Both the position numbers and the translations under genes were made by a program. A DNA stretch of 64,000 nucleotides, taken from positions 20,088,001-20,152,000 of the forward strand of contig OZ038379.1 of assembly GCA_964036045.1 (NCBI GenBank). Direction: 5' to 3'. Positions 2,901-48,988 of this stretch are shown one piece after another (position 1 is the first letter of the stretch; each line of letters opens with the position of its first letter). The DNA comes from Eutreptiella sp. 'Long Island Sound 2002'. Lineage: Eukaryota > Protista > Euglenida. Under the pieces are notes generated by a model. The model saw nothing but the letters and a program-made list of their open reading frames with translations, ran no database searches and was not told the DNA's origin.

Positions 2901-3239
2901 TACACCTTTTCCCTCCTCCAAACAAGTGCGAGGGTGAGGGCACCTGGACTGCCCAGCCTGCGGCGGGACTCCGGATGTGGCATGTATTTTCGGCTGAAAG
3001 GGTTATGTAGCCATTTTGCCACGTGTGGGCTCCCAGGATGACAGGGGAGGGGAGGCGCGCGGGGGGGGGGGGGGGGTTGGTTTTGGGTTTTGGGTTGGAC
3101 CCTTCTGCCAGGACCCCACCATGCCAGGCCACGGCGAGCCATGCTACCACGCATGCTTGGAGGATCCTGGTTGCCTCTTCGGGTCCGCGAAGCCACAGGG
3201 GTGGCCCCACTGCCGCCTTCGCGACAGACGGGTGAAACA

Positions 3240-3900
3240 TCCGGGGGGCTTAATCCTAACCATGTCACTTCATGGTGGCTGCCACTGGACGGGCCGGCAT
3301 GACCGCCGGGGTGGATGCCACGCACATGCAGGGTGATGACAGGGCAGTCCTCATATCGGTCTGGTACCATCGTAGATCCTCACACAGTGAGGTCTGGACC
3401 CCGTCCAAATGCTCCTGAGCCATAGGCTAAGGGTCACAAGCCCCCTCTCAGAAGGTCCCTTGCTACCCTCTCGGAGGACTAAACTAACTGGGTGAGCCAC
3501 AGGCCACATTCTCCTCTGGTGTGCATCCACAGGCTCCAGGCCACTTGGGACAACCAGGAGGGTTAACCCACAGGTCCACAAGACCCCTTGTGACAGTGAG
3601 AACCATGGACAATCCAGACGGACTGTCCCACACGTACATGGTGGCCCGTGGGGGGGCTGAGACGCCGGGCTCCTGGCCACTCGTACTCAGGGGTACCCCG
3701 AACAGGGCCCGTATGTGACCCCCACCCCTCTGTTCTGAAGCCGGGCTCTCCTGGAGACCGTGGCTGGCAACCCCTATTTCTTCCACTTGGTCTCGCAGTG
3801 GTAGGGCTGCCCCATCCACATAGCACCTTCCCCAGGGGGTGGCGGTCCCTGGTAGTGGAGGCCCCCTGTCCAGGCCCATCTGACTCGGGGCGCGGGGGGG
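3240..3900 (-). repeat. Dispersed repeat, inverted homolog of 52800-53460
   Basis: The reverse complement shares long blocks with 52800-53460, e.g. AGTCAGATGGGCCTGGACA.GGGGCC, CCCTGGGGAAGGTGCTAT.TGGATG and CCCGTCCAGTGGCAGCCACC.TGAAG. Confidence 0.8.
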
Positions 3901-4199
3901 GGGGGGGGTCACCAGGGCGTAAGAGAAAGCTGGTGTGTACGGTCGGTAAAACCAGTTACCTCCAGGGTTCAGAATCCCTCCGCCTCCCTTCTGGACCCCC
4001 CAAAGTTTTTGGACCCACTTTTCGACAGTTTCAGATTTTGGCCGGGAACATGGGCGCCGCCTTTGGGGGTTTTTTAGCCAACGGCAGGGGGGGTTCACCC
4101 CGCCCGGCCCCCTGTCCGGACCCCCCTCCAGCCCCCGGGGACCCCCCCATACCTGTAGCAACGCGCCTGGCCACCGGCACCGCCGGCCGACGGGAGCCG

Positions 4200-4330: not shown

Positions 4331-4518
4331 AGCATCGCCACTTGCACTGCACAGTGCCAGGCATAAACAGCAACCCCATTTTGAGCTTTCACACTACACA
4401 CACGGCATAGCTTAGGACTCAGCAACTGTATGGCCACTCAGTCTGACTCAGGTCACTGACTGGTCTCACAATCAATATGCATGACGATGCAGCTGCTACG
4501 GGGCGTTGGACAGCCGCT

Positions 4519-4545
4519 CGTCGTCTCCTGCTCTCCACTCCGCAG
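4519..4545 (+). promoter_or_regulatory. Candidate spliced-leader trans-splice acceptor
   Basis: Pyrimidine tract TCGTCTCCTGCTCTCCACTCC followed by GCAG, 32 nt before the ATG at 4578. Euglenozoan mRNAs are SL trans-spliced. Confidence 0.4.
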
Positions 4546-4577
4546 TTGCACCCAGAAGCGCCGCAGGGGCGTGCTCC

Positions 4578-4995
4578 ATGGTTCGTGTCTCTGCTCTGTC
4601 TGCCGATGGCTGCGGGGCCCCGCCGGGGACCCAGGCCTCAAGCTGGCAGCCCTTCGCCTGTGCGGGGCTTGTCGGCTGCTGCATGATGCTGGGCCTCGTC
4701 ACGGCCGGCACCTCCCCCTTCCCCTCCACGGGCCTGTGGGCCTCTGCCCCGGCCGTTTCCAGAGTTGCGGTGCGCCCCGTTCCCTCTGCTGCTGTGCTGA
4801 CGCCTGGACGCCCCGCGACACTCAGGGCCGGCCCTTACGATGCCGTCGTCGCCGCAGTCGCCAAGGGACCGGACCCGACGGTGCCTTCGCTGCTGATGCC
4901 GGAGTCGACGCCGCACGCGTGGCCGATGGTGTCGGGTTTGGCTGCGATCGGGACTGTCGTGGTGGCGTTGTGGAGCAGCTTCTGGGGCCCCAAAG
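4578..4995 (+). CDS. Exon 1 of plastid-targeted candidate selenoprotein (class I euglenid presequence)
   Basis: MVRVS... contains hydrophobic TM1 (FACAGLVGCCMMLGLVTA), an S/T/A/P-rich transit region and TM2 (GLAAIGTVVVALWSSFW). It ends at donor AAAG|GTGTGC (GT 4996, phase 1). Confidence 0.8.
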
Positions 4996-5919
4996 GTGTG
5001 CACCGGCGGGGGCCTTGTGCCGCTTTGTGCTCTTCGTGTTGTGTGTCTTGCCGCCGGGGGAAAAGTGCCGGAGTACCAGCACCAGCGGTGCTTCGTTGGG
5101 CTGGAGAACTGTGGGGAAGGGCTTGGTTTCCAGAGACAATGGGCTGGGCTCTCTGTGCGCCTTCGCACTTGAAGTGGACGGAGTTTTTTTCTGCAGAACA
5201 CTCAGTCCAGCCACCGTCGTCGTCGGTTGGCCCTCAGCCGCAGTCGGTTGGTTCGCGTGTGCAGCGGCGGAACTCCAACAAAATATGCCCCTTGTGTTTC
5301 TCAGCCCGGCTGTCTGGTCTGGCGTGGGGGCACTTTCCGCGTCGTCCGGTTGTTTGATGGCCCTGGGCGCACATCCGCTGATGTGGAGCTGACGGGACAG
5401 CTGTTGGGCCGGGCGTGACCCCGCTTGACAGTCACATGGTTGTCATTTGCCGTCGGTGGTGCATGGCTCACCCCCCGCACAGTGGAACCCCACACCCCTG
5501 TTTACTGTGCGAAAGTCCATCTCCTATACATCATGGGTTGCACTGCGTGCACGCCGAGTAGAACTCCCACATGCCAATCTTGTATGGATTGGCGTGTACA
5601 GCGTATGGGCCAGAAAATGGGCCAGGGGTCGTGGTACGCTTGCGATTATCCTCGGCAATCGGACGGAGACGTAAACCGGACGTGTGGGTAGTGCAGGCCC
5701 AACTTGGCATGCGTCGGATACGCATGAAGCAAGCAGCATGGGAAGGGGGGCGCCTCATGTGGTTATATGATGATGTAGTTGTCCTTGAAGCATCACCTGA
5801 CTGGGTCAGCGCCGCTTCACTGGATTGAGACGCACGACAAGAGGCATTGCAGAAAGATGGTGCGGAACACAAGTGATACACGGACGAAACGGGATGCTCA
5901 TGGGAGACCCGCTTGTGTT

Positions 5920-6150
5920 TGGGGGCGCACCGTGCGCTGTGCGCGCGCTGTGCGAAAAGTCGGCTGTTTTTCACCACCGGTAGCCACGGGTCCCAGGGTC
6001 CTGAAATCTGCACCCCCGATGCTGTTTTGAATGGATCATGCACGCTTCTGGAGGTGGGTGGTTTTCAGGGGTGTTCCCGGGATAAACAACGTAATAATTG
6101 GCGCTGTGCCTGCGCTATGCGCGCGCTGTGCGAAAACGCCCCCTTTCTTC
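5920..6150 (+). repeat. Intronic dispersed repeat (second copy at 16215-16525)
   Basis: Shares GGGGGCG.ACCGTGCGCTGTGCGCGCGCTGTGCGAAAAGT and GGTGGGTGGTTTTCAGGG...CGTAATAATTGGCGCTGTGCC...GCTGTGCGAAAACGCCCC with the 16.2-16.5 kb copy. Confidence 0.85.
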
Positions 6151-6261
6151 GGAACCGGTGTCATGGGTCAACGACCCTGTCAAAAGAGCCTTGTCCCTGC
6201 ATTGCACTCCTCAACCCCAAGCCCCAAGGCGAATTACCCATCGATTGTACGTGTGCTTCAG

Positions 6262-6316
6262 GCAAAGCCCTTGCTATGGCTGCTACTGGAGGTCAGAAGT
6301 CGGATGATACAGAGAG
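6262..6316 (+). CDS. Exon 2 of plastid-targeted candidate selenoprotein
   Basis: Acceptor TGCTTCAG|GC (phase 1, matches exon 1); an alternative in-phase acceptor CCCCAAG|G starts at 6229. Encodes (G)KALAMAATGGQKSDDTE, an AMAATG-type motif typical after TM2 of euglenid presequences. Donor GAGAG|GTATGC (GT 6317, phase 2) matches the exon 3 acceptor. Confidence 0.7.
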
Positions 6317-7214
6317 GTATGCTGGCCGCTCCCATGCACCCTGATGCACCCCGTGTGCGGCGTGATTTGCCAAAGGGTTTTCATCTGCGTCACCTCCGCC
6401 TGTGTGACAGACATCGTGGGGGTGGGTGGGTGGGTGGGGAGCTCTTGAGCCTGCAGCTTATCCCGGGTGTCGTGGCTTGCTGCAAGCGATGGCGGAACAC
6501 CATACCAGCCAGTTCTTAGTCATAGGGCCTCAGATTTCAGAGGTGCCTGTGCTCCTTCCGAACTGCTTCATGTCCACTTCGGTGCCTTCCCGGGCATCAA
6601 TGTGCATGCTGCGCTGCCCTCGGCGCCAGGCTTGCCTCGTCGACCCCGGGAGCCGGAAGGGACTAAGAACGCTGGTGCGGGAGACGGCCCGTGTGTTGTA
6701 CGTCTACCTCCACCCTGACCCCGATTTGCGTAGAGCCCCACTCGATAATGAAATGGACACCTTATTCAAAGGCCTGCCCCCCCTCCCGCTCAGACTTCCA
6801 GAACGGTCACATCTTATCGATGTCCAGCTCGTATACCCCCTTTCAGGCGTTATTGTGAGGCCCTGCGCGCGCGTGCGTGCGCAGCATGACACCTGGACAC
6901 GGTGTACGCATGGCCTTGTCTGAGCACGGGATCCCCATGTGACCGTGGTCGCTGCTGACATGGGCCTCATGCGGCCTCTCCACGTCACGAGCTGATGAGG
7001 ACGCCTACTTTCTGGCCGGCGCGTGCCCCATAGAGGCCTCTCATGCCCTGCTTGGGTGGTGTGCTCATTAGAAAACCCTCTTCCTGGAAGAGCGTGCGTT
7101 GTATAGGCCTCCTATGGCCTCCACCACGCACGTACTTGTCAGCAAACCCACAGTCTGGCCAGTGCTTGCCGTGCCTGCACACACGGAGGGGATGGGGGGG
7201 GGGATTTTTGGCAT

Positions 7215-7600
7215 TGACCGACCGCGTCATGGGGGGGCGGCCGGGCCCAGTCCTTATATGCAACCCCCCAGCCCCCTCCCCCCCCCCCAAGTTTTGAGAG
7301 ATAGTGGTGCTGGGGCCATGGCGCCAACGGCGCCAAATTTTTTTTTTTTGCATGCTTAGTTGAAGGGGGTACTATGCCTCTGGTCCTTGTTCTGCTCCCT
7401 TTGTACAGCCCAGTGACACACCATGGCAACACTTGACCTTGAGAAGTTGCTGAAGCGAGGGAACTGCATGGTGTGCAAGAAGCCCCCCCCCCCCCTTGAG
7501 AACCCCTCTCCCCCCCCACCGTATTGCCAATTGAACCCCTCCCCCAACTGCCCCCCCAAGTTTTGACAGATAGCTGGGGAGTGGGTCGCATCAGGACCGA
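7215..7600 (+). repeat. Dispersed repeat pieces (copies at 32595-32700 and 33225-33285)
   Basis: GGCCGGGCCC.GTCCTT.TATGCAAC...GTTTTGAGAGATAGTGGTG.TGGGG.CATG.CGCCAACGGCG recurs at 32.6 kb. CCCCAAGTTTT.ACAGATAGC...GTCGCATCAGGACCG.TTGTAGTC recurs at 33.2 kb. Confidence 0.8.
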
Positions 7601-8026
7601 TTGTAGTCCCCCCCCACCCCATGGACCGCACCCTCCCCCCCCCTGGTAGCCATAGTGATTGCAGTACAATTGAGCAGTGTCAAACTGAATGAGTCCGGCA
7701 TGAGGTCAGGATGATGCTGGTTATTTCATCCTGACATCATGGCCCTGGTAGCCATCTCTCCCTCACAGTCACAGAGGTCAGCTGTCACGCACCTGACACC
7801 TGAACGAGAGGTACGCGGTTCGAACCCTGGGGGCACTGGATAACGAGCACCCAGACCCCCCTGCCATGGCACAAGTGCAGCAGCTGGGCATCCTCAAACA
7901 CCACGGCCTTCAACATGATAATGAATTGATAATGATCACAATGGCTCTCCGGAACAGGAGAAAGCTCAGGTTTTCGCCTCGCCTCACCTCACCTCACTTT
8001 ACCCCTTACCTCACCTCTCATCGCAG

Positions 8027-8612
8027 TCTGCGTTCCAAGGCCGATGAAGCCGCCGGAGAGGCCTTCGACGACCCCATGGCGTCGCAGTTCAAGACCATGT
8101 ACCGCCCGGGGCAGGGCAAGCAGATCACATGGGGGATCTTCCAGACCGACGTCCCGACCCCCAAGAAGGCCAACGGCGAGAATATGTCCTTTGCCGAGTT
8201 CGCCGCCGCCGACTCCGCAGAGCGCCAGCAGCTGCGTGCCACCGCAGCACAGGAGCTGACCAACATTGGGGCCGAGGAGCGGGGCCGGCGGTACAAGGCC
8301 GGCGTATTCTTTGGGGCCCTGGCGGTGGCGCTGGGCGTGTTCCAGGTGTCCACCGGCGCGCCCCCGCTCCAGCGTGCGGCGATGGCGCTGCCGCTGTTCT
8401 TCACCCTTGGCTTCACGGGCTCTGGCGCGACGGGCCTGTGAAACATCGGTCAGGCCGGTGTTTGGGACGTGGACGGCACCGGCCTGCAGGAGATTGAAGA
8501 CCAGGGCGTGGCGAAGGCGATACGGGACAAGGTGAACGCGTTCAATGCCACGGCGGCGGTGGTGGTGGCGCTGCTGACGGCCGCGTACTGTGCGCTGCCG
8601 CTCAGCAACTGA
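8027..8612 (+). CDS. Exon 3 of candidate membrane selenoprotein, with in-frame TGA (putative Sec) at 8439-8441
   Basis: Pyrimidine-rich acceptor ...CTCTCATCGCAG| (phase 2). GC3-rich codons continue past the TGA for 56 codons (NIGQAGVWDVDGTGLQEIEDQGVAKAIRDKVNAFNATAAVVVALLTAAYCALPLSN) to TGA 8610-8612. There are three hydrophobic segments and a SECIS-like hairpin downstream. Confidence 0.8.
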
Positions 8613-8679
8613 GGCGTGACCCGCGGTGATTTGGGGTGAGGCGCCGACGGCGGCGGACTGATCTGGACGAGGGGATTTG

Positions 8680-8745
8680 CTGCGTTGGTGACGGCGCCTG
8701 CCGTGAGCGCTGCGGTGCCGGTGGGAGGCCTGATTATTCATGCAG
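8680..8745 (+). promoter_or_regulatory. SECIS-like element (form 2) in the 3' UTR
   Basis: Folded by hand: helix I CTGCGT(8680-85)/ATGCAG(8740-45); core GTGAC(8688-92)/TGAT(8731-34); helix II GGCGCCTGCCG/CGGTGGGAGGCC (10 bp including G-U pairs, with a 1x2 loop); unpaired TGA (8704-06); mini-helix GCGC/GTGC with loop TGCG. Confidence 0.7.
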
Positions 8746-9900
8746 AAGAAGACCTTCGAGCTTTTGAGGTCTGATAAGTCGTTGGTTGCAAATGGACTGT
8801 ACGGCGGGTGTACGGTATGCGGTATGCCACTTACCCCCCCCCCCCGTTCATGCGTATGACTTGTGTACGCCGGTTGCAGGCCTCAGAAATACCCATTTCC
8901 GCAACGTTACCGTGCATTTATCCTCCAATGGGCTAATTTGGGGAAATGGGGGGAATTGGGGGAAACTGTGCGAGATCACCCCAAAGAGAGGTTGTTAGAT
9001 CAAGCGTAGGCGCGGATGCCATACATCTCCCCTTATGGGGGTCGTTCACATAGCATACTCCAACGCATGATATTGGATATCTAACCCCTTGTAAAATCAT
9101 TCTTTTGTGAGACACAGTGATCCTCCAATGAATTTTTCGATTTTGAGCCCCTACCCCCTGAAACTGGATACCACATTTTGGAGAGGTGGAGGGGTGGGGG
9201 TGGGTGGGGGGGGTTGGGGGGTCCAAAAGTTTGTGCTTTGAAGGATTTGGACTAGGGTCGGAGCTGATGAGCGAATCGACCCGTGCGGATGGTTGCCGGC
9301 CGCGATTCGAACCGACATCAGGTAAGTCGTTCCATTTAGCTCCATTACAATGGCACAGTGGCATTGTGAAATAATCGAAATCAGCAATGTTGTTGGAAGC
9401 CTGACTCACACATGCCCAAACGCCGGTGACCGGTTCCACCAGCAGGCTAAAAACAAGTGTTTCTGTGGTGTAGAAAAAGCAGTCACATTTTCCCAAATTT
9501 TCCATCCATCCTAACTCCACACTTTTTTTCATTTGCCCCCCAACCCCCGCCCCCTATATCACCCCATTTCCCCCCATTTCTCACCCTTTCCCCCCCATCC
9601 CGACCCCATTCCCCCCCCATTTTTCTTGGTGCTGGGTGCATTTTGGGTACGTTGCTGGGTATAGTACTGTCCACGTGGTCTGGGTATTTCTGAGGCCTGG
9701 GATTGTGTGCCCCGTGTCTGCGTTTTGCATGGCCATTGCACCCCCGCTGTGGCGCAGTCCCTTGGGTGGGTCTGTTGCATGCCGAACGCAGTGCACCCAC
9801 GCGTCCCAATTCCCTGCAAAAACCCCGTTTGCATGCAATTGGGTGTTTGGTGGGAAGCCCGAGTGTCGGTGATTCCCGATCCTGTCAGCAACCTCGCAGG

Positions 9901-10027
9901 GCAGCAGGAGTGCTGTCTTTTGCCGCAGAATTGCTGTCTGTTGCAGAATTGCAGCGTGTTGTGGCAGCAATATTGCGCGTTCTGCAGTAATGCTGCCTGT
10001 TGTGGCAGTAATGCTGCGTGTTGTGGC
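9901..10027 (+). repeat. Degenerate ~21-bp tandem repeat
   Basis: Units resemble GCAGTAATGCTGCGTGTTGTG. Confidence 0.7.
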
Positions 10028-10399
10028 CAACTGTTATAATCTTGCTGCCAGAAAGGTACAAACAGATCCACAGGACTTATTTTATTTTGTGCAAACAATT
10101 TAATGTTTGCACCGGAGGTTGTCTTCTGCCTCTTCTAAGCTCAAGGCACGTCGGCCGCCTCCCCGCACAAGCCAGGAAGACCATGGACAATGGGCAGGCG
10201 GGCAGTGGCCAAAAGAGGTGAGGCGATGGCCGGAGTACTTTACGAAAGTCCATGCTTGGTCCAGAAACCCCAGAATTTGGTCCCTCCTTTCGAAAGCGCA
10301 CCCAACACTACTTTCCCCAATTTCTGGCTGAGATTTCATTGAACCCGAGTCGTCAGTGGCAGCGGTCGCAAGCATGCATCTGCAGAGGTCGTAAGGTGA

Positions 10400-13300
10400 A
10401 CAAGCCCCCCATGAGACCTTCCCTGAGCTTACCTTGAGTGGGTTTATCCCCCCTCCGCCGCACCACTGAGAAGGGGTGCATCACAATCACCGATCCTGAA
10501 TGACGAGCACGGCGATATAGGGCGCGAACCACGGGGCACTATCCTCTGCTTTGTCCCCCTGCGCACGATGGGAGAGCCTCCACTGTAAACCCTGTGGCCC
10601 CTGTGATCAGGATTATGCCCCGCAGAACTGACGACAGGGCGTTGGGGTGGGGCTCCGGGTCTGTCAGAAACCGTCTGATAAGGCAGGTCGTGCCCCCGTG
10701 CGGTCGCCTGCCCGTCCCCCGGTGGCGCATTTCCCGTGTCGTGTGCTCCGTGGGTGGGACAGGGCGTCACACCAATCAACCAACCGCAGTGTCTCGGGAT
10801 GGGGCTCTGGGAATTCATATGGATAGCGTGGGACCACACGACACAGTGGTGTGTAACGCAGGCACACCCCAAGGCAGCACGGCACGACGGAGAGGTGATG
10901 TAGGGGGGTTTGGCAGAGCGGAAAGAACACCTAATAAACAGGGATTGGGTTGGGGCCTGCAGTGAAATGGCGCTCGTGATTTGTCCTTCCACCTCAGCAG
11001 ACCAGGGGAGGAGCTTTGCGGTATGCGGCCTTGGGTCCAGACTCCAGTGCCGGCTCCATTCGATTAAGGGGCGGAGCTCTGTGGGGGTGTTGACAGGAAG
11101 CCCGGCCAGACTGCCTGATCCCATGAGCATCCCAGTGTTTTTGGTTAGGGCCTGATCCTTGACTCCGGCTTCCCGAGTGCCTTGTGGAGCTTTGCTCTGC
11201 TTGGCCACGCCTGTACAATACATATGTATAATTTTTTCCGACAGTTTGACGGGTCAAAACCAGGATGGATGTTTTTGCAGGCAGTGGCCCTCAAACTTGT
11301 GGGAACCTTCAGCCCTGGACCATTGTTTGACTGCCATGTGGAGTGCCCTCCAGGTGACGATTCTTTTTGGAGAGCCAGGCCAATTGCAGTCTGCAAACAC
11401 CCGCATTGGATTCTGCCTGCATTGCAATGCCCCATGTGGCGTAGTGTATGTACAGCTGTGGGTAGTGCTGTAGGGGTCACAAAAATGGTGTACCACAATG
11501 TGGGAGAATTGGCCTTTCACAGGGACGACATGTTTGTTCAAGAAACCGCCACTGTCAATCTTTCTCTGCAACGCAGTAATTTACTTGAATCCGTGGCATT
11601 CTGCAAAGCGGTGTCCATTTCTGACTTACACTTCAAACATACACTCAACACTTACTTCAGCACTCATAGACACACACACTTGCACACACAAAATTCGCTG
11701 ACACACAAGCAGCACTCACTCACGTCACAGAAGCTAGGTTATACGATGGGTGGCACAGCCCTTGTAACATACTGGCAACCTTCCTCATTTCGTCCTCTTT
11801 CTTCCCTTTGTACTTTACACCCCTCTTAATTGGAGACCAATTTTTCTCTTCAACTTCCACAACACAAGTGGGGACGTCAGCCCACGGAAAACTTGATGCG
11901 TTAAGAAGATTAAAAAAAAAAAGTGATCACGTCAAACTGCTACTATCAAATTACAGATGGATACAAAGAAAAGGAAGAGGTCCAGAGCAGGGCACGCATG
12001 CCTTAGACCATGCGGAGTGAGGGCATACGAGGGAGGGGACAGAGAGGCGATAAACACAACACACGCACTACGGTAGAGGAAGAAGGGCATGAACGAGTAA
12101 CAGGTATCTAGAGTTTGAGAAAGAGAGTTGGACGGAGATGTGCATAGACACATCAGAACGAGGTGCATGAGGTGCATGCATGAGGTCTATGTAGGATGCA
12201 GTGTCTGGCAACAGTTTCGTGGTCGAATGGCCTACCCTGATGGTCAATCAAACCACTGGAAATCTGAGGCCTGTTTTAATCAACACAAGAGACAGACCAG
12301 CATATAAAACCATTACGGACCGTGGCATGGCCAAGATTCCACTCCCTGAAAGGGGCTGAACTTAAGGACTGGTGGATGCACAAAAACAAAAGCAGTCCAA
12401 ACTGCTACAAGCAAGACTGCCACAGCTCCTGTCAGGTTTTGTTTGCTTTCTTGCTATCCTTGGGAGTTGTGTCAAAGTGTAACTTCTGGTCAAATGCTCA
12501 TCAAGGACTTTGAATGGGTGAGAGCAGGAACTATGGGGCCCCCCTGGCAATCTGATGCTGCATAAGTTGATAGCTTTTTCCACCCGATCCTTGCAAGAAA
12601 CGGGATTGTGATTTTTGTCGCATCCACTCCATACCTAAGGATTAGGTGGGCACAGACAGACAAACTGGTGCTAATTTGCCCACTAGGTGCAAAACTCTGT
12701 CATGTTCTAAATGGTCCACAGTGCCGAGAACCCAGATGGAACAATCATACAAACACTCAGCTCACATTGTTGGCCAGCTGGCAATGGTCCTGGAACTTTG
12801 CATTCAGGAAGCAAGTGCCAGGCTGGCATGAGCGGGCTCAAGCCCTCCCAACAAAGGGCCCAGACGGCCAGATACTGGAGTTGGTGCACTGCGTGCAATG
12901 CCGACACAATGAAACCTAGCCAGGGAGGAAGGGAGGAAACCCCGATGCATTTATGCAGGCGTCACAAGGGTCCTCATATACTTGGTGATTGGTGGCCGTG
13001 GCCAAGTGCAATCTGCTGTTGTGTGAGTGTGTTGGAAGATGGTGGCAGCCTTCTCGGGACATAGGCATTCTGCCTTGACCCCATTGGGGCCCAACTTGTA
13101 GCAATATGCAGCACTATGTGGGCCATTACTGATAAACCATGCTACTGATTCGCAATGATCTGAGAGCGCGGATGGAGGGTTCAAGTGCTGGTTCATAAAG
13201 AGAATCCACAAAGACATTGTTTCCTAGAGATAGCAAGGCAATGACCATGAGGGTTGGAATCCGCTTTGGAGTGTGTAACAACCCACCTGCCGATTTGTTG
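10400..13300. mobile_element. Decayed retroelement-like zone
   Basis: Broken ORFs with retrotransposon C-terminal-like Cys/His fragments. No intact domain was recognised. Confidence 0.25.
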
Positions 13301-13540
13301 CATTCTGAATGTACACAACATCCGGTGATTCCCCATCATCATAATCCACCATCCACCTAAAACAAAGAACATGCAACAAAACCGGGTAAAAATGGGCTGA
13401 AATGGCTGAAAATGGGTGAACATGGGTGGCAATTCAAATGTGCCACATCCTCGATGCACAAGAGGCGTAAACAATTCTATTATGGAACAACCAACTGGTG
13501 AAAAAAGGCCAAAACTAGGGTTCAAGTAGTTGCCGACATA

Positions 13541-14046
13541 CCCCCCCCCCTTGTTGTTCCCCACCCCTTGTCGTTCCCCGGGGGGGGGGGGGGGGACCGT
13601 CACTTGGTCAACCCAAAATTTTCGTTGCGGCTCATTGTGTTGTTGTGTGGGTGACTGTGTTGTGGGGCACTACCACTTGCATCCCTTGCACTCATGGCAG
13701 GGAATTTTGCTCACTTTCGCTGAAATGGAACTTGATAGCACAACCATGTTTCCCCCTGGGACAAGTGGTGAGCATGTGGAAGAGTTCACGGTGAAGTGGA
13801 GCAGGACCGAGAAATTTTACACCGAGCCGGTCAAGGAGTAGGTCTCCGTACATTGGCAGCCCTTTGAACACATCCTATGTTGAATTCTTTCGTTTTATTT
13901 TGCAATTTTTGTGCCTGCAAATGTGCGTGTACGGTGGGGTGTGGTCCCCCAGGGGGGGGTGGGGGACCGTCACTTGGTGACCATCCCCCAGGGGGTGGTG
14001 GGGGACCGTCTTCCCTGGGTTGGGGAACGACAAGGGGGGGGGAGGG
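13541..14046. mobile_element. TA-flanked MITE-like element with C-run terminal inverted repeats
   Basis: Left end TA|CCCCCCCCCCTTGTTGTTCCCCACCC; right end GGGTTGGGGAACGACAAGGGGGGGGGAGGG|TA. The internal direct repeat GGACCGTCACTTGGT lies near both ends (13594, 13964). Confidence 0.7.
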
Positions 14047-14718
14047 TACAAAAGTTTGCACTGCGTGCGCACTGCGGGCGCACTACGTGCACGGCATTCC
14101 CCTTGGCCTGGTGTCTTGGTCCTTGAGTCCCAGGTTTGTCACATTCCGTGGTGCTGCCTTTGTTCAGTGGTGACTTTCCTCGAAACCCCTCGCCATCCCC
14201 TTGTGCAAGCTAACAGCACTTCTATCTCGGTATTAATGTGCAGCCTGATTTGATTCGGTAATACCTGTGATGCCGCGCACAAGGGTTGGGCTTATGGATT
14301 GTAGGCTTGCACAGCAAGCATCTCACACTACCGCGAAGCGGAGGCCTCTCTCCCGGAAAGCACAACACCACAGAAGCAATGCAAGCGTTTTTGCCGGTTG
14401 CTCTGCACTTTTTGGGTTGATCCCCCCTCACATCTTGAATATCAATGTTCAATGACCATCAGTCGAGAGAACATTCGGCATTCTTAGTCTTTCGGGAGAC
14501 AGCCGATGGCACATTCTGCTTGAGCTTGAGCGGTTCAGTGGACTGATTCCGGCCACGTTTTGGGTGACCATAGCACCAAATGCCTTCGCTGGTACGTACG
14601 CAGCCTTTGCATTGGGAGATTTTGTCAACCATTGTCAGCCATTGTCAACCACGAGCCTTCACTGTGCTCACTCATCGCTGCATCACTCACTTTTGTCAGC
14701 GGTCGATCCCCTACGACC

Positions 14719-15105
14719 ATGTACATCTCCAGCCTCATCGCTCGGCAGTGGCCGCAGACGTTGCGACGATCCCTTCTGCGTTGTTCTGCGCGCATCCACC
14801 AGCCCACAGACTGCAGGCACAAACGAACGGCTGCCGTTGCTGCAACACAGCACAGTGCATGTCCATGGCCTTCCACGTTGCGGTCCACCCATGTCCGGCC
14901 CTTGAGCACAAGATCAGGCGCCCAGGGGCAGTACCACGAGGTGCTCAAGAAGTGTCCGCCCGACGAACCCGCATTCAAGGCAGTCGTGACCCAACTGCTC
15001 GAGCAGCAGACACAGTTTGAGGATTGGCTGGTGCAGCTGCGCAGCAGTGGTGGTGCGAGTGAAGGCAATCCAGCGCTTGTGGATGAAGTCGCGTGCGCTT
15101 TACAG
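14719..15105 (+). CDS. Exon 1 of hypothetical protein with mitochondrial-type presequence
   Basis: The ATG is preceded by pyrimidine tract + CAG (14697-99). The N-terminus MYISSLIARQWPQTLRRSLLRCSARIHQ is Arg-rich and acid-poor, followed by a helical region. Donor TTACAG|GTACAG is phase 0. Confidence 0.6.
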
Positions 15106-15747
15106 GTACAGGGCTCTGCCGGTTCCCTGCATGTTGTACTTACCCCCCGCCCTCCGTGTCAGCGCAACAGTAGGTGTTGTTTCCGGCAACTTTTGGAACT
15201 GAGTTGTTGCTCTCGCAAGGGGAGGGGGCGGGGGTACAACATCATCCCAAGAGACTATGTCGTGATTGTTGTGGCATAGCGCTGTTGCCCTGAAAGCCGG
15301 AAGGGGCAGGCTCCCATCGGGGTTTGACATGCTGCGTTTAGTCTGCTTCGCTGGGTCACACTTTGTGGTTCGTTGTGTCTCAAGTGTGCTCTCCGCGCTC
15401 TCTTCCTCGTGCTCCGTACAACGCCGCAGTGCTATGGTCTCTTGTAGAGTGAGACAGTCGCAAAGGAAACGCAGCGCATTGGCTGCGAGCGGGCAGTGTG
15501 CCACAGGTGTTCAGTGTTTTAGTACTGCCCTACCTCAGTCAGGGGGTTTCGCAGCTTCTCCCGGAGATGGAGAGGACGGGGCTTTTCATCTGCCCCCACC
15601 CGGGCAGTGTTGTTCGGACGTAATTGTGTTCAAGACCCCAAGATCGCCTTCGTTTCCTTCTCATCGCCGTCGATTCCCCTGCAAAAGAGAATCCCGTCGC
15701 TCCAGAGGTCGATCGAGACTACGTGAGGCTTGTACCGATGGATGCAG

Positions 15748-15864
15748 GTTGAACGATTCGAAGGTGCCACTCGACTAGCGGCGCCGGGAGTAAAGCCGCG
15801 GCCTCCAAACACTCCCCAAGACCCCGTGGTCGAGGGTTCGCACACGGGGGTCCGACACCGACGG
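15748..15864 (+). CDS. Possible exon 2 of the 14719-16940 gene
   Basis: Acceptor GATGCAG|GTT is phase 0 and encodes VERFEGATRLAAPGVKPRPPNTPQDPVVEGSHTGVRHRR. Phase-0 donors exist at 15865 (GTGGCA) or 15883 (GTGCGT). The exon could also be absent, since exons 1 and 3 join in phase. Confidence 0.35.
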
Positions 15865-16214
15865 GTGGCATCACGCCCGGTCGTGCGTGAGCGTGCTTGG
15901 CGAGTGGTCCTCAGGAATAGGGCCCATGCCCCGGAATTCCCTTCGACTGCCGGGCCCCAAGCAACGCACGCTGGGGGTTGTTATTTCGACCGTTCAGCAC
16001 CGCCCTGACCACCATCCCCCGCCCTGTGTCCCTTGTGATAGAGCCAGAAGGGGCCCGAGGTTGGGAGAACAGGGATGGGGCTACGTAACCACGCGGCAGT
16101 CTGGAGGCGTGACGCATGGCGACGTGCCGGTTTGTACCATCAGCCATTTGGGATGGGGCTGTCGAAAGCCGATGCACGTTGCCGCTGTCTTGATGGCGAC
16201 CTCTGGACAACATG

Positions 16215-23935: not shown

Positions 23936-24489
23936 TTAAGAAATCATGCTCAACGCCCAGATAACGAACAAAGATCATGCGGCTTTTGCGCCCATAAGCT
24001 GCGCAATAAGTTCCCCCCAACTCTACGAGGAGAAGGAAGACTCTGCCATGAAGAATCAGTGTTAGAGACTTCCTCCTGGACATGCCCAGCCAACAGGTAA
24101 CGCTTGGTCAAAGGAGCTTTACAAAGGTTGTAATGATCTAGTATGTGTGAACCTGAAGCGTAAATTTTTGGTGGCAACAGATGGATTGTTTCACTATGGT
24201 ATGACCACAAAAAATATTCACTCAAGGGGTTACGCCACGGTGACTGCACTGGCACTGCAAATATATGCCGCACACACCGTATTGTTTGGCTGGTTGCATT
24301 TATGTGTCACACTACGTACAATGACATGAAACACACTTCACAGGACTTGTGCTCGAGTCTATGATCGGTCAATGATTGGTTCACTCTTGAGGGTCACTCA
24401 AAATGAAATCCACCTTGCATGCAACCACTTACATGCAACAGACCTTCGCATATTTTTTAGTGATGACTGCAAGTACAGTTGATATCTTC

Positions 24490-25950
24490 ATGCCGCAAGA
24501 GGACAGGCTCTTCTGTGCACATGCACATGAGAGCCTTGTTGCCCAGTGTACGGTTGATTTGGATGAAGACTTGGAGGCGGAATGGTCGTTGCTCCAACTT
24601 CAAGCTGTGGTTCAGCAATGTCTAAAGACGTCAGCAGCCCCAGCACCACCTTCGGAAACTCTCAAAACTGCACCAGGCACACAGGTAGTCCAGGTTGTCG
24701 AACACCCAAAGTCTGTGATAATGGGACTCCCATTTCACGTATTCGGCGACGTCTTCTCCTTTGTTCCTCTCCGTTCCCTCTCGGAGGCTGCCACCGTGTG
24801 CAGCAGTTGGGCCGCAGTGGCCCGCTTTGCTGTGGAGGAGACGGAGAAGAGGGCTGAGCAATATGTGCACGAAGGGTTGCTCCGTATGGCTACCACCAAT
24901 TCTCCTTGGGAAAGCCTCGACAAATTCCAGACTGCCATCGCCGTCTTTCCGAGGATGATTAAGGCATATTATTGGGCGGCAAAGGCCTTTCTCATCCTCA
25001 ATGACTGCGAAGGTGCCATTCGCACCATGGATCGTGCCTTGCAGCAACAACCATCTCGGTCGGAGAGTCTCAAGTTGCAAGCTTGCATCCTGTACACCTA
25101 CGGTGATGACCGCCATGCCAGCGAGCTCCTTGAGGAAGCCCTTCGCTTGGAGCCAAACGATGCCACGATTCACTTTGAGCTCGGGTTTTGTTATCAAGGG
25201 CTTCGAGAATTTGCCAAGGCCATCGATTGTTATGCAGCTGCCCTCCGACTCAATTACACTCGTGCTTTTGTGGCACTGGCGAACCGGGCTGATTGTTGGT
25301 ACCACAGCAACAAGATGGAAGAAGCCTTGGAGGATCTGACAGCCTCGTTGCTTATCTGCCCTCACTACCCCTTGGCTTTGAGGATCCGTGCCATTGTAAA
25401 TGAGCACCTGGGAGATGCCCACGCCGCGCACAAGGACTACACCACCATCATTGAAACTGCGACAGATCCGAAGGTCCAATCCGACGCCTATTGCGACCGC
25501 GCTGTCTGTTTCGGCGACGTGGACGTGGACGACATCGAGCAAGCCCATCGGATCTATCCCAACTACCTGAAACCTGTGCAGTTCAAAGCATCTGCATTGG
25601 TAAACGATGGTCGCGTTGACGAGGCCATCACTTACGTGTCCGAGTGGATGGCAGGCACAACTGCAAACGCAGATCGTGCCAGCCAGTACGCTTTTCGTGG
25701 GGAGCTGTACTCCATCATCCGTGACTGGAAGGCGAGCATTCGAGATTACGAAAAGGCCATAGAACTCACCGAGCATGGCAAGATTCCAGAATACCCGGAT
25801 TACTGCGATGATTACGACGCTCGTGAGACTGTCTCTGCATACTTTGAGCGCCTTGAAGAACTGAAGGCCGAACAACTGCTGGAAGAACAACCGCCTAGAT
25901 TTTCCCTCGCATCCCCCACAGGAAACGATTTTTGGGGGCATTCCAATTAG
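24490..25950 (+). CDS. F-box domain + TPR-repeat protein, uninterrupted ORF
   Basis: F-box motif LPFHVFGDVFSFVPLRSLSEAATVCSSWAAVA, then about 9 TPR-like repeats (e.g. ATIHFELGFCYQGLREFAKAIDCYAAALRLN). The ORF is open from 24403; ATG 24490 follows a CAG at 24476-78. Confidence 0.88.
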   Translation: MPQEDRLFCAHAHESLVAQCTVDLDEDLEAEWSLLQLQAVVQQCLKTSAAPAPPSETLKTAPGTQVVQVVEHPKSVIMGLPFHVFGDVFSFVPLRSLSEAATVCSSWAAVARFAVEETEKRAEQYVHEGLLRMATTNSPWESLDKFQTAIAVFPRMIKAYYWAAKAFLILNDCEGAIRTMDRALQQQPSRSESLKLQACILYTYGDDRHASELLEEALRLEPNDATIHFELGFCYQGLREFAKAIDCYAAALRLNYTRAFVALANRADCWYHSNKMEEALEDLTASLLICPHYPLALRIRAIVNEHLGDAHAAHKDYTTIIETATDPKVQSDAYCDRAVCFGDVDVDDIEQAHRIYPNYLKPVQFKASALVNDGRVDEAITYVSEWMAGTTANADRASQYAFRGELYSIIRDWKASIRDYEKAIELTEHGKIPEYPDYCDDYDARETVSAYFERLEELKAEQLLEEQPPRFSLASPTGNDFWGHSN

Positions 25951-41913: not shown

Positions 41914-44077
41914 CCGGGAAAACCCCTGTCCCCCATCACCAAACCAAGTAGTGCCAAGGACTTGACGCAAGCTAAAGTTTTTACAGGCCCACGGGGTGCC
42001 TTGATGCGGGGGTCCCATTGGGAACTATGCTTCCTCCACTGTGGGATATGCACGCAAAGTTGAGGTGCGTGTTTTAGATATGGGCTAAGAACATTGTCTA
42101 AGTGGTCCAAGATCCCCGTCAGAAGGCAGACGTCATCGCCTTGGACGGGAGTGAGGCCAAAGAGGACCACTCACCCTCTAGACCCCAACCCACCTACCCA
42201 GCTTGTGGAGTACGCGCCGTCAGAGCAGCCCACAAACAACCTGCCCACCCTGCCCCCATCTAGCTCCCGGAACAAGACAACAAGGTGCCCTTGCCAAATG
42301 CATGTGGCAGTCAAGCCGCGGTGCCGGATTCATGGTGCCGTGCACCCACACTCAAAACTTCTACGGGGTCACATCACTACCGAAGTACCCGAGCTTTTGT
42401 AGCCTAGCGTTCACGCGCCCCTACATGTGCCCACCCGCCCGAAGAAGTGCCTGTCTTGCGGGGTAGATTGGGCTGACATTCTTTCGGCGGCGGCCCATCG
42501 ACATGCCATGCTTTGGCGGGTGTCCTACCCATCCATCACGCCCCTCTATTCTCTCTTGTGGTTTGAGACCACGAATTGGGTGTGCGATGCTTGACACCAA
42601 GTATTTGGCTAATGATTCTGGTTGTGATTCTAATTCTACTCCTAATCTTGGCAGTCCTTCCCCAAGTGTAGCAACATCTGGTGGGTCACCAGATGAGGAT
42701 GGTGCGCCAATTTCAAGGTGCAGTGTCACCTTGGACACCAAGACTACTTCAGATTTGATGTTTCTCACATCAGTTGATAGTGACCTCTTTACACACCCTG
42801 CCTTCCTGGTTTCCCTTCCATGGCTTATTTCCACGTTTGGTGAAGGGTTTTGTGGTCTACACCCTGAAGAATCAGTCCACAATTTTTGGGGAATGGCCCA
42901 TTGCCGATCAGGAATTACCACAAGACTTGTGCGCAGCAAGGGGTAAAAAAACAACAAAAAGAAAACATTTTGATCCTAGAAGCATTTATCAGTTGCCCCA
43001 AGGGTGATCACCGCAGAAACTCTTTGTGTTCACGAATATCATCACCCTTAAGCATCACCAATGGCGAAATTTGTTTGTTCAACGGATGCGTGCATTGCTA
43101 TTTTTCTGAGGGGCAGGGGGCTTAGCGCAGTGTGCGCGCACTGCAACTATTTGGGTGTCTGGTCGTACTAGAAACACATACTTCTTGATTCTAGGGGCAT
43201 CGTTGTTGTTTGACAACAGGTTTTTGATGCTTCCTCCGCACTGGGCATATGGCATATCTGCGCTTTCACCCAGTTTCACCAATTTTCACCCATTTTCACC
43301 CCTTTTCACAATCTTTGCTCATTTCCCCGCATTTTCTCCTTTCTAGGTTGTTTTTTGGTTGTGAAGGGAAAGGTAGAGCCTGACGGCCGGGAGGTTTGGT
43401 CCCTCTTGCAATGTTGGACTGACAGGGTTCCATTGTTAGGTGAGGATGCCCAGGTTTATGCTGCCATTGTAGCCATGCGCATACCGGTTGCCAAAATGTA
43501 CAGCACCATGCACCATGTACCAACCAGAGGCACTACAAAGCACCTGTGGTTGCTAGGGCCTTTCGCCAGCATGTGTGACACCGTAAAAAGTCTCCCTACC
43601 TAAACTGGCTTGAGCACGATGCTCTCGCCACTCTAACCCACATCAAGCACTTTGGGTTGGGTATGTCTTATGGGAAAGGAAGGTAGCTTGCCAGCGTCTC
43701 GAGCTAGGGTTGCCGGGGTGGCCTAATTTTGAAGGTGTTTGGAAAGGGTGTGTCTGGGGCTCTCCAGGGGAGGGGGGACTTGGTCTAAAAGTAGCGTGCA
43801 GTGCAAGGATTCTCCTTGGGCATTGGTACCGTTCCTTTATGGGGCTTGCTAGTAGCTCCCCTGTGCGTACCTTTTGGAAGTCCTACTGCTGGGGTTCATT
43901 TCTGTTTGGTAGTGTGCTGGCCAGTGCCGATTCGATTCGAGATTGTGTGTCTTGTGTGGTGTTAATGTTTGCTGCCAACATTTGCTTCCGGAAGGAATGC
44001 CGTTGTTTGGACCCTCAGGGTTCTGCCAGGTTCAATCCAAACCAACTGCTACAACGCCGCTGCAGAGGAAGTGCAAT

Positions 44078-48030: not shown

Positions 48031-48610
48031 GGTTCGAGGAAGTGACAGCAAGCATCTAGAAGCTGGAGCCGGTGCCTGCATGAGTGCAAATGGATTTTCA
48101 GAATACAGTGCATTACTAAACGCCTGGTTTTCAAGGATCTTGCACAGAATGAAACGCAGCATACTCTGCCGAATCGAATCCCCCCCCCCCCCGGCACCCC
48201 ACCTGCTGGTAGCGGTCATGCGGTATGGAGAGTGTGTGTTGTGCACACATTTCGTGTCGTACCACAGATCCATGTTCCACGGTAGTGGACACATTGATGT
48301 TTAGCAGCACCAACTCAAATGGCTCACGCGACATTGCATCCTGGTGATTTTTTTTTTTGCAGCTGTTTGCACCATTTAAGGAGTGCATTACTCCATGGAG
48401 GGACAAGAATGTTCACAAAAGCCCCTAGATTGTCCTCGATATTTCTATTTTGAGTAATTTCGCCACAGCCATTTACAGTGCGTGCCATGGGCTGTGACTG
48501 TGGTCAGCTAGGGCTTAGAAAGGGAGGTGGGCGGGGTTGCCATGGTAATAATTGGGCCTTTGGTGCTGAGCATAGACACACTCTCATGCAGTTGGCCAAA
48601 AGAGACTACC

Positions 48611-48910: not shown

Positions 48911-48988
48911 GACTTTCGTATTTTCGGACTTATCGCCTCGCCACTGCAGGTTGGCCATTTGTTTCCGCCACTGCGCCTCGACACACCA

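What the first reader, a model, noticed from the sequence alone, without database searches (positions are those of the whole stretch)
4578..8612. The candidate selenoprotein carries a class I euglenid plastid-targeting presequence
Seen: three phase-consistent GT-AG exons (4578-4995, 6262-6316 or 6229-6316, 8027-8612) give a 352-aa (or 363-aa) protein with the UGA at codon 296 (or 307). Its N-terminus is TM1 - S/T/A/P-rich transit - TM2 - KALAMAATG. Established: this is the class I targeting architecture for the three-membrane euglenid plastid. Inference: a Sec-containing integral membrane protein of a secondary plastid would be unusual, as most characterised selenoproteins are cytosolic, ER or mitochondrial. 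It would imply Sec decoding on ER-bound ribosomes before plastid import and a possible redox role in thylakoid or envelope membranes.
Basis: partly seen in the sequence, partly recalled or inferred. Interest (0 to 1): 0.75.

Follow-up and report, generated by a model that had tools for sequence, protein, structure and literature searches.

The report
Plastid-targeted algal membrane selenoprotein gene
The gene is a new copy of an already described but uncharacterised algal selenium-containing membrane protein, and an upstream exon gives it the kind of signal that sends proteins to the Euglena chloroplast, which suggests where this protein family works.

Summary
The sequence facts hold. Exons 4578-4995, 6262-6316 (or 6229-6316) and 8027-8612 are GT-AG, in phase, and give 352 aa with TGA at codon 296.

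The mature part (exon 3) is an ortholog of "hypothetical protein 3", a selenoprotein reported in Ostreococcus in 2007. In 164 of 173 relatives the gene call stops at this same TGA. Coding continues after it, and a few relatives have Cys there. So Sec is well supported, and the family is not new.

Exon 1 meets the published measures for a euglenid class I presequence. No other ATG-started ORF in the window does. Its codon bias fits the claimed frame.

The junctions cannot be fixed from DNA. Hundreds of in-frame alternatives exist, exon 2 has no support of its own, and no transcript was found.

Relatives carry transit-peptide-like or signal-peptide-plus-Phe N-termini, which points to a plastid family. 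Some are fused to glutaredoxin or thioredoxin, which points to a redox role.

Open points:
- No canonical SECIS lies downstream, only a non-canonical candidate in a long 3' hairpin.
- The organism is unlabelled.

Verdict: a new member of a known kind with an informative targeting signal.

The parts
4525..4545 (+). Pyrimidine-rich tract ending in AG, 33 nt before the ATG. It is a possible spliced-leader acceptor. No other ATG lies between it and 4578.
   Evidence: Read from the sequence. Inference only.
4578..4995 (+). Exon 1, encoding the presequence. Signal-peptide hydrophobic core at about 4644-4715, transit-peptide-like region at about 4710-4925, stop-transfer hydrophobic core at about 4914-4985.
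   Evidence: hydropathy and composition; null over all ATGs; GC3 0.79-0.80 and codon score best in this frame, lost after about 5000.
6262..6316 (+). Candidate exon 2 (alternative acceptor at 6229), encoding GKALAMAATGGQKSDDTE. It restores the reading phase but has no support of its own.
   Evidence: GT-AG, phase. (GC3 0.31). (one of 348 phase-compatible open AG..GT intervals; 24 pass a simple splice-site filter).
8027..8612 (+). Exon 3: the whole mature protein, from about AFDDPMASQFK to the C-terminus PLSN. It holds two hydrophobic helices before the Sec codon and one after it.
   Evidence: homology. (strong codon bias).
8439..8441 (+). In-frame TGA, read as selenocysteine, in the motif G-L-U-N-I-G-Q-A-G-V-W-D-V-D-G-T-G.
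   Evidence: TGA in L001, L003, L006, L007, L008, L010. (U in the Ostreococcus proteins). (164 of 173 relatives end here; 5 have C, 3 have W). (alignment column).
8442..8609 (+). 56 codons after the TGA, conserved with relatives and with full coding bias. Stop codon at 8610-8612.
   Evidence: (codon score 0.585 and GC3 0.86 after the TGA, against -0.195 and 0.61 after the final stop).
8643..8786 (+). Long imperfect hairpin in the 3' UTR. It contains a SECIS-like but non-canonical candidate at 8680-8745: helix I 8680-8685/8740-8745, GUGA 8688-8691, GA (not AA) bulge 8705-8706, a mini-stem, and UGAU 8731-8734.
   Evidence: MFE -80.4 kcal/mol, z -2.96, 1 of 200 shuffles as good. (inner part z -1.62). 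(11 equally good helix pairs per 128 kb). Function not shown.

Best explanation
This is a nuclear gene of a green-plastid secondary alga, most likely a euglenophyte. It encodes an ortholog of the algal 'hypothetical selenoprotein 3'.

Shown:
- The mature protein lies entirely in exon 3. It has a small soluble N-terminal domain and three long hydrophobic helices.
- A single selenocysteine, encoded by the TGA at 8439-8441, sits just after the second helix in the conserved motif GL-U-NIxQAGVWDVDGTG.
- On a quick tree the gene is nested among green-algal copies.

Inferred:
- The gene came from the green-algal ancestor of the plastid.
- A separate upstream exon (4578-4995) adds a tripartite class I presequence: signal peptide, transit-like region and stop-transfer anchor.
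- The precursor would start on ER-bound ribosomes and be held in the membrane by the stop-transfer segment while the rest is made on the cytosolic face, including decoding of UGA at codon 296. It would then travel by vesicles to the three-membrane plastid, as described for other class I proteins.
- In the plastid membrane the Sec would act as a one-residue redox centre recycled by glutaredoxin/glutathione or thioredoxin. After two membrane passes the Sec lies on the same side as the N-terminus, which is where relatives carry a fused glutaredoxin or thioredoxin.
- A peroxidase-like or reductase-like action at the membrane surface is the likeliest chemistry. The substrate is unknown.
For: Family identity and Sec:
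- The word search, profile search and full HMM search give 6, then 44, then 350 relatives.
- The Ostreococcus 'hypothetical protein 3' sequences printed in PMC2375036 supplement 2 carry U at the same place. P0047 has the N-terminus printed for the O. lucimarinus protein, apart from a few residues.
- 164 of 173 relatives that reach the profile end stop exactly there. Five have Cys, and three have Trp, which is TGA read under another code (alignment A4).
- The TGA and the conserved downstream frame were read directly in six loci.
- Coding bias continues across the TGA and ends at 8612.

Presequence:
- Class I measures are met and are unique in the window.
- Frame-specific GC3 and codon score support exon 1.
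- Exon 3 has no start or targeting signal of its own. It is preceded by a pyrimidine tract and CAG.
- E. gracilis plastid-protein genes typically have introns late in, or just after, the presequence region (PMC2920757).

Plastid family:
- Of 131 relatives with an M start and an extension of at least 30 aa, 85 have R/K-rich, acid-poor extensions with a median length of 70 aa. The other 46 have an early hydrophobic signal-peptide-like core.
- 27 of 44 of these have a small-residue-Phe dipeptide in residues 11-50, against 25 of 172 control windows.

Origin:
- On a quick ML tree the window protein is sister to P0002 (SH-aLRT 98). Both lie inside a 45-row clade (support 96) with 33 transit-peptide-type and no signal-peptide-type members.
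- The window protein and P0002 share an insertion.

Redox role:
- Glutaredoxin (PF00462, E 1e-15 to 1e-17) is fused N-terminally in P0060, P0061, P0063 and P0085.
- Thioredoxin (PF00085, 24.6 bits against a cut-off of 23.5) is fused in P0118.
Against: - No transcript evidence joins exon 1 to exon 3. The junctions are not determinable, with 231 + 72 direct joins and 348 middle exons possible. In Euglena agilis 71.8% of introns are nonconventional (PMC12501133), so a GT-AG-only model is weak.
- The introns here (1.27 and 1.71 kb) are far longer than the 41-93 bp presequence introns reported for E. gracilis.
- No canonical SECIS (NTGA_AA/CC_GA with a registered helix II) lies in 8613-12500 or 8612-16000, although the same scripts find the SECIS of L003, L006 and L007. 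No sequence matches the algal SECIS.
- The contig is an unlabelled ENA assembly record, so euglenid identity is an inference.
- TargetP found no chloroplast transit peptide on any O. tauri selenoprotein (PMC8834552). The green-algal extensions could therefore be mitochondrial.
- No euglenid ortholog with a class I presequence was found for comparison.
Confidence: 0.6

Rival explanations
1. Exon 3 is a genuine selenoprotein gene, but the ORF at 4578-4995 is not part of it. It would be either a chance GC-rich ORF or the first exon of another transcript, and the real 5' exon or exons lie elsewhere.
For: There is no transcript evidence. Many in-frame joins are possible by chance. The exon 1 codon score is only about 0 in its best frame. 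GC-rich DNA gives long ORFs in several frames here.
Against: The class I pattern is unique among 2407 ATGs. The GC3 excess is frame-specific and ends near 4995-5000. The ORF is on the same strand, 3 kb upstream of a mature-only exon whose relatives all carry N-terminal targeting extensions. No other coding-like segment with a start codon was seen between 5000 and 8027.
Confidence: 0.2
2. The locus is not decoded as Sec. With no functional SECIS the UGA terminates, giving a truncated 295-aa product or a decaying or silent gene copy.
For: No canonical SECIS lies within about 7 kb downstream, while the controls are found. Only a non-canonical GUGA...GA...UGAU candidate is present.
Against: The 56 codons after the TGA keep full codon bias and high identity to relatives, and the frame stops where the relatives stop. 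A long, unusually stable hairpin lies right after the stop codon. 3'-UTR introns are known in Euglena, so a SECIS could lie further off. Euglenid SECIS rules are not described in the papers searched.
Confidence: 0.1
3. The contig is not from a euglenid but from another alga whose plastid precursors carry a signal peptide, a transit peptide and a stop-transfer segment, such as a dinoflagellate.
For: The organism is unlabelled. By general knowledge, class I-type presequences also occur in peridinin dinoflagellates. Some relatives (P0129, P0059) show two hydrophobic peaks.
Against: The protein nests inside the transit-peptide-type (green-algal) clade, next to P0002, away from all signal-peptide-type sequences. 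Its hydrophobic peak positions and proline-rich transit region match the E. gracilis statistics.
Confidence: 0.1

Closest known systems
'Hypothetical protein 3' selenoprotein of Ostreococcus tauri and O. lucimarinus (Lobanov et al. 2007, Genome Biol 8:R198). Probably counted under 'Hypo' in Jiang et al. 2020 and listed as ostta08g03600 'Unknown' in Cells 2022.
   Same: It is homologous over the whole mature protein, with U in the same GL-U-NIAQAGVWDV motif and the same C-terminal helix ending AAYCA(L/I)PL.
   Different: The window copy has a class I presequence on a separate exon instead of a simple R/A/S/T-rich extension. It shares an insertion (TP.K..G...MSFAEF) with P0002 only. It lacks the ATGA-type SECIS that is conserved in L003, L006 and L007.
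MSP, the 'membrane selenoprotein' of Chlamydomonas, Ostreococcus and Dictyostelium
   Same: It is also an algal membrane selenoprotein of unknown function, found almost only in the Sec form.
   Different: It is a different family. MSP is reported with two Sec residues (in the Dictyostelium section) and is listed separately from hypothetical protein 3 in the same paper.
Euglena gracilis class I plastid precursors (Durnford & Gray 2006; Sulli et al. 1999), for example pLHCPII
   Same: They share the order signal peptide, transit-like region, stop-transfer anchor, then mature protein. They also have introns late in, or just after, the presequence region. By general knowledge pLHCPII is likewise a multi-helix membrane protein.
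   Different: None of the described class I cargoes is reported as a selenoprotein. Here the introns are kilobases long rather than about 50 bp.
ER-membrane selenoproteins of animals (SELENOK, SELENOS; general knowledge)
   Same: They are small membrane-anchored proteins with a single Sec, made on ER-bound ribosomes, with redox partners.
   Different: They are not homologous, since no Pfam, PDB or Foldseek match was found. Their Sec is near the C-terminus of a cytosolic tail, not between membrane helices.

Membership tests
Algal 'hypothetical selenoprotein 3' family | Sequence homology across the mature domain | tested here: met
   E 1e-26 to 1e-47 to P0002-P0007. The profile searches return the window ORF P0001 at 2e-58 and 1e-45. 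The printed Ostreococcus sequences match.
Algal 'hypothetical selenoprotein 3' family | In-frame TGA at the conserved GL-U-N position, with conserved coding sequence after it | tested here: met
   TGA at 8439-8441. Six related loci have TGA at the same place. Codon score after the TGA is 0.585.
Algal 'hypothetical selenoprotein 3' family | Cys in place of Sec in some homologs (Sec/Cys pair) | tested here: met
   P0185, P0144, P0149 and P0114 have C in that alignment column.
Algal 'hypothetical selenoprotein 3' family | SECIS element in the 3' UTR | tested here: inconclusive
   No canonical element lies in 8613-12500 or 8612-16000, while the controls are found. A non-canonical candidate sits at 8680-8745 in a stable hairpin. 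Rfam is uninformative because it also misses the control elements.
Algal 'hypothetical selenoprotein 3' family | Selenium actually incorporated | not testable with these tools
   This needs 75Se labelling or mass spectrometry.
Euglenid class I plastid precursor | N-terminal hydrophobic signal peptide (published range: residues 9-60) | tested here: met
   Kyte-Doolittle peak (window 13) centred on residues 31-39, maximum 2.25.
Euglenid class I plastid precursor | Transit-peptide-like region rich in S/T/A/P/R, poor in D/E/K, with slightly positive charge | tested here: met
   72 aa with P 19%, A 18%, S+T 18%, D+E 4%, K 1.4% and net charge +2. Criteria.
Euglenid class I plastid precursor | Second hydrophobic stop-transfer domain (published range: residues 97-130) | tested here: met
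   Peak centred on residues 122-130, maximum 2.18.
Euglenid class I plastid precursor | Presequence and mature part on one spliced-leader-capped mRNA | not testable with these tools
   No transcript-derived protein is in the collections. The junctions are ambiguous.
Euglenid class I plastid precursor | The organism is a euglenophyte | tested here: inconclusive
   The contig is ENA ERZ25074135 ctg10587_40x_l and carries no organism label. The accession is in no paper searched. There are no rRNA, tRNA or SL genes in the window. The green-algal placement of the protein is consistent with a euglenophyte.
MSP (membrane selenoprotein) | Homology to MSP; two Sec residues | tested here: not met
   There is one TGA only. 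The source paper lists MSP and hypothetical protein 3 as different proteins.
YgaP-like/DUF2892 membrane domain (a lead from memory) | Match to the Pfam model | tested here: not met
   No Pfam family hits the pieces at E<=10 or the full-length Cys forms at E<=0.1.

The most novel reading that the evidence does not exclude
This family would be the first plastid-resident selenoprotein family. It would be a glutaredoxin- or thioredoxin-coupled, single-Sec membrane protein of thylakoid or envelope, kept almost exclusively in the Sec form across green, red-derived and euglenid plastids. The euglenid copy would be decoded through a non-canonical SECIS (GUGA...GA...UGAU inside a long hairpin), or through one placed beyond a 3'-UTR intron.
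Probability: 0.35. Interest if true: 0.7.

Novelty: new member of a known kind. Interest (0 to 1): 0.5.

Why it matters
The family has been listed as a selenoprotein of unknown function since 2007. A 2022 analysis of O. tauri reported no chloroplast-targeted selenoproteins.

A class I presequence on the euglenid-type copy, together with signal-peptide-plus-Phe presequences on many other copies, gives a concrete and testable location: the plastid. The glutaredoxin and thioredoxin fusions give a testable partner.

If confirmed, selenium would have a direct role in plastid membrane redox chemistry in many algal lineages. That bears on why aquatic phototrophs keep large selenoproteomes while land plants lost them.

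Tried and rejected
- Pfam and NCBIfam on the three pieces gave nothing. Pfam on full-length Cys forms also gave nothing, so the remembered likeness to DUF2892/YgaP is not supported.
- A PDB sequence profile search gave nothing. Foldseek of a confident AF2 model (pLDDT 90.8) against PDB gave a best E of 1.7 and TM of at most 0.26, so no solved relative exists.
- Rfam found no SECIS in the window. It also misses the clear SECIS of L006 and L007, so this negative is uninformative.
- A sequence search for the conserved algal SECIS arms in the window found no meaningful match.
- Identity with MSP was rejected.
- A hairpin with CUGAUGAG at about 9255-9330 was considered as a SECIS or hammerhead. It was rejected because helix II would consume the GA of the quartet, stem II does not fit a hammerhead core, and Rfam gives no hit.
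- Organism identity could not be settled. Look-up of the window ORF gives only an unlabelled ENA record, the accession appears in no paper, and there are no tRNA or other Rfam genes. The PARP-like and carrier genes are single ORFs, so no intron type could be read from them.
- The upstream ORF of L001 was checked for a class I exon and none was found. P0002 looks like a primary-plastid green-algal protein.
- Literature phrases for plastid, chloroplast or apicoplast selenoproteins gave no paper. A remembered report of an apicoplast selenoprotein in Plasmodium could not be checked.
- The careful tree did not finish, so the quick tree (SH-aLRT only) is reported. 19 rows with partial domains were left out.
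- No protein read through the stop was handed to any tool. The pieces were searched apart.
Full report
**1. What is in the sequence**

- The ATG is at 4578.
- The donors are AAG|GTGTGC after 4995 and GAG|GTATGC after 6316.
- The acceptors are before 6262 (or 6229) and before 8027. The last one follows a long pyrimidine tract and CAG.
- The joined frame is open for 352 (or 363) codons apart from one TGA at 8439-8441, which is codon 296 (or 307). It ends at 8610-8612.

**2. What the mature protein is**

Pfam and NCBIfam find nothing on the pieces.

A word search with the part before the TGA found six relatives. Five of their six gene calls end at ...GSGA(T/S)GL, the residue before our TGA. The sixth, P0007, leaves the frame at an intron.

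I fetched their contigs. The stop is TGA in each, and the frame reads on as NIAQAGVWDVDGTGLQEI.D...IRDKVN.FN... to a C-terminus like ours.

The same sequences, with U at that place, are printed as 'hypothetical protein 3' of Ostreococcus tauri and O. lucimarinus in supplement 2 of Lobanov et al. 2007 (PMC2375036). P0047 from the database has the N-terminus printed for the O. lucimarinus protein, apart from a few residues. It is not MSP. That paper lists MSP separately and reports two Sec residues for it, in its Dictyostelium section.

A profile search gave 44 relatives. A full HMM search of 1.84 billion representatives gave 350 at E<=1e-3. Of 173 fetched members that reach the end of the profile:
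- 164 stop exactly there;
- 5 have Cys;
- 3 have Trp, which is TGA read under another genetic code;
- 1 has His (alignment A4).

With a codon table trained only on the carrier gene of this window, the 56 codons after the TGA score 0.585 (GC3 0.86). The stretch before the TGA scores 0.389, and the stretch after the final stop scores -0.195.

Taken together, Sec at codon 296 is well supported. It is also already known for the family.

**3. The presequence**

Novak Vanclova et al. (bioRxiv 10.1101/573709) studied 375 E. gracilis plastid proteins. They place the signal-peptide hydrophobic peak at residues 9-60 and the stop-transfer peak at 97-130. Between them lies a region rich in S, T, A, R, H and especially P, and poor in D, E, K, L, I and F.

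The exon-1 product has peaks centred on residues 31-39 and 122-130. Between them are 72 residues with P 19%, A 18%, S+T 18%, D+E 4%, K 1.4% and net charge +2.

As a null I applied the same test to every ATG on both strands. Of 2407 ATGs, 107 are open for at least 137 codons. Three show two peaks, and only 4578 also has the composition.

GC3 is 0.79-0.80 in the claimed frame and 0.66-0.67 in the other two. The six-frame codon-score pattern copies that of exon 3, and the advantage ends near 5000.

A pyrimidine tract ending in AG lies 33 nt before the ATG, with no other ATG in between. It could be the spliced-leader acceptor (inference).

Exon 3 has no start codon or targeting signal of its own.

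**4. What cannot be settled: the junctions**

Phase consistency is not evidence here.
- 231 direct GT-AG joins between the exon-1 ORF and the exon-3 ORF are in frame and open.
- 348 AG..GT intervals could serve as a phase-restoring middle exon, and 24 of them pass a simple splice-site filter.
- In Euglena agilis 71.8% of introns are nonconventional, with the signature N3-C(A/G/T)G...C(A/C/T)G-N5-6|R (PMC12501133). 72 direct joins fit that signature. Examples are donors at 5000 or 5003 with acceptors at 8037-8061.
- Exon 2 has GC3 0.31.

Alternatives whose donor lies beyond the stop-transfer segment (from about 4995), and all middle-exon models, keep the signal peptide, transit region and stop-transfer segment in front of the mature protein. 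The architecture is therefore more robust than the coordinates.

No transcript-derived protein exists in the collections searched. The source record is an unlabelled ENA assembly contig of 1.27 Mb.

Introns late in, or just after, the presequence region are typical of E. gracilis plastid-protein genes. Those reported are 41-93 bp, whereas these would be 1.27 and 1.71 kb (PMC2920757).

**5. Where the family works**

Among 131 relatives with an M start and an N-terminal extension of at least 30 residues:
- 85 have extensions with a median length of 70 aa, 17% R+K and 7% D+E. These are transit-peptide-like.
- 46 start with a hydrophobic signal-peptide-like core.

In 27 of 44 of the latter group a small residue followed by Phe occurs in residues 11-50, usually right after the hydrophobic core. 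Examples are ...GAEA|FRPT...GSSA|FGFH and ...KADA|FYLG. The same dipeptide occurs in 25 of 172 control windows. By established knowledge this is the hallmark of plastid import in diatoms, haptophytes and cryptophytes.

On a quick ML tree the window protein is sister to P0002 (SH-aLRT 98). Both lie within a clade of 45 rows (support 96) that holds 33 transit-peptide-type members and no signal-peptide-type member. All 42 signal-peptide-type rows lie outside it. This tree uses 113 columns, the careful search did not finish, and 19 partial rows were left out.

The window protein and P0002 also share an insertion.

The simplest reading is that the gene came from the green-algal plastid donor and acquired a class I presequence in the host. 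That fits a euglenophyte, but the organism itself was not identified.

One published analysis cuts the other way. TargetP predicted no chloroplast transit peptide on any O. tauri selenoprotein (PMC8834552). That prediction depends on gene models, and the 2007 O. tauri model starts inside the mature domain.

**6. How it may work**

An AlphaFold2 model was made of a full-length Cys form (P0185) using alignment A4. It is confident (pLDDT 90.8, pTM 0.82). It shows:
- a beta-hairpin and two short helices;
- two long helices, 73-99 and 104-126;
- a short helix and strand around the Cys and the WDVDG motif;
- a final long helix, 150-179.

Neither sequence nor fold matches any solved structure.

Several representative relatives carry an N-terminal domain in front of this one. 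P0060, P0061, P0063 and P0085 have glutaredoxin (PF00462, E 1e-15 to 1e-17). P0118 has thioredoxin (24.6 bits against a cut-off of 23.5).

After two membrane passes the Sec lies on the same side as the N-terminus. A fused or free glutaredoxin could therefore reach it.

I infer a single-Sec redox centre at the membrane surface, recycled by glutaredoxin/glutathione or thioredoxin. The substrate is unknown.

**7. The SECIS problem**

L003, L006 and L007 share an ATGA-type SECIS with invariant arms. My scanners find them.

The same scanners, including the published primary pattern NTGA_(10-13)_AA/CC_(15-39)_GA, find no element with a registered helix II in 8613-12500, and none in 8612-16000. No sequence in the window resembles the algal element.

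Rfam finds nothing either, but it also misses the control elements.

What is present is a long hairpin at 8643-8786 directly after the stop codon. Its MFE is -80.4 kcal/mol, with z -2.96 and only 1 of 200 shuffles as stable. Inside it is a SECIS-like arrangement:
- helix I at 8680-8685 / 8740-8745;
- GUGA at 8688-8691;
- a GA bulge 13 nt later, where AA is expected;
- a mini-stem;
- UGAU at 8731-8734.

A G before the quartet and a long mini-stem are the rule in Ostreococcus. The missing AA and an imperfect helix II register make this element non-canonical. Helix pairs of equal energy occur about 11 times per 128 kb.

3'-UTR introns are known in Euglena, so the true element could lie further away. 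I leave this open.

**8. Verdict**

Its core holds: an upstream class I-type presequence exon in front of a Sec-containing membrane protein.
- The junction coordinates and exon 2 are unproven.
- The selenoprotein is a member of a family known since 2007, so the finding is a new member of a known kind.
- Sec decoding on ER-bound ribosomes is not in itself unusual.
- The added value is location and partner. Three different kinds of targeting signal across the family point to the plastid, and natural fusions point to glutaredoxin or thioredoxin.
- I found no paper in the searched library describing a plastid selenoprotein.

Noticed in passing
window 48527-49936 (+): A single 469-aa ORF with three Mito_carr repeats (PF00153, E 3.7e-50) and GC3 of 0.89. 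It is a mitochondrial carrier gene with a 178-aa N-terminal extension. I used it as an independent codon-usage training set.
   Followed up: partly
window 24403-25950 (+): A 515-aa ORF with TPR repeats (E 9e-23) and a weak F-box-like match (E 1.9e-4). Its GC3 is only 0.58, unlike the carrier gene and the selenoprotein exon.
   Followed up: no
window 43943-44887 (+): A 314-aa ORF with a partial PARP catalytic-domain match (PF00644, E 1.1e-7). It overlaps long ORFs in two other frames and on the opposite strand in a GC-rich stretch.
   Followed up: no
window 5933-5981 and 6111-6159: A 49-nt direct repeat (78% identical, 178 nt apart) inside the proposed intron 1, just upstream of candidate exon 2.
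   Followed up: no
window 7267-7304 and 7536-7573; also 3051-3080, 3884-3913, 7470-7497, 8821-8848, 9188-9225: A repeated element made of a C-run followed by AAGTTTTGA(G/C)AGATAG occurs twice in the proposed intron 2. Many long G- or C-runs flank the gene, and some form distant inverted pairs.
   Followed up: no
window 9942-10023: Two tandem 41-nt units (78% identical), rich in TGCAG/GCAGC and able to form hairpins. They produced weak chance Rfam matches.
   Followed up: no
window 9255-9330: A hairpin with a perfect 7-bp stem (CGAATCG/CGATTCG), preceded by CTGATGAG and closed by GGTCGG/CCGAC. I considered it as a SECIS or hammerhead and rejected both.
   Followed up: partly
L003 4875-4922, L006 1028-1089, L007 1090-1133: The 3' UTRs of three green-algal orthologs share an ATGA-type SECIS with invariant arms and a variable apical part. 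Rfam's SECIS models do not detect it even in a 447-nt search.
   Followed up: yes
P0060, P0061, P0063, P0085, P0050 (partial), P0118: Natural fusions place glutaredoxin or thioredoxin N-terminal to this selenoprotein domain. Most of these also start with a signal-peptide-like segment.
   Followed up: partly
L003 about 4490-4620; L008 about 1415-1620: The orthologous genes in two green-algal contigs have short introns at different places near the Sec codon: after GFTG in L003 and after AGVW in L008. This is why the gene calls P0007 and P0006 end oddly.
   Followed up: partly
window 1-64000: There is no tRNA gene (ARAGORN) and no Rfam family at gathering score anywhere in the 64 kb.
   Followed up: yes
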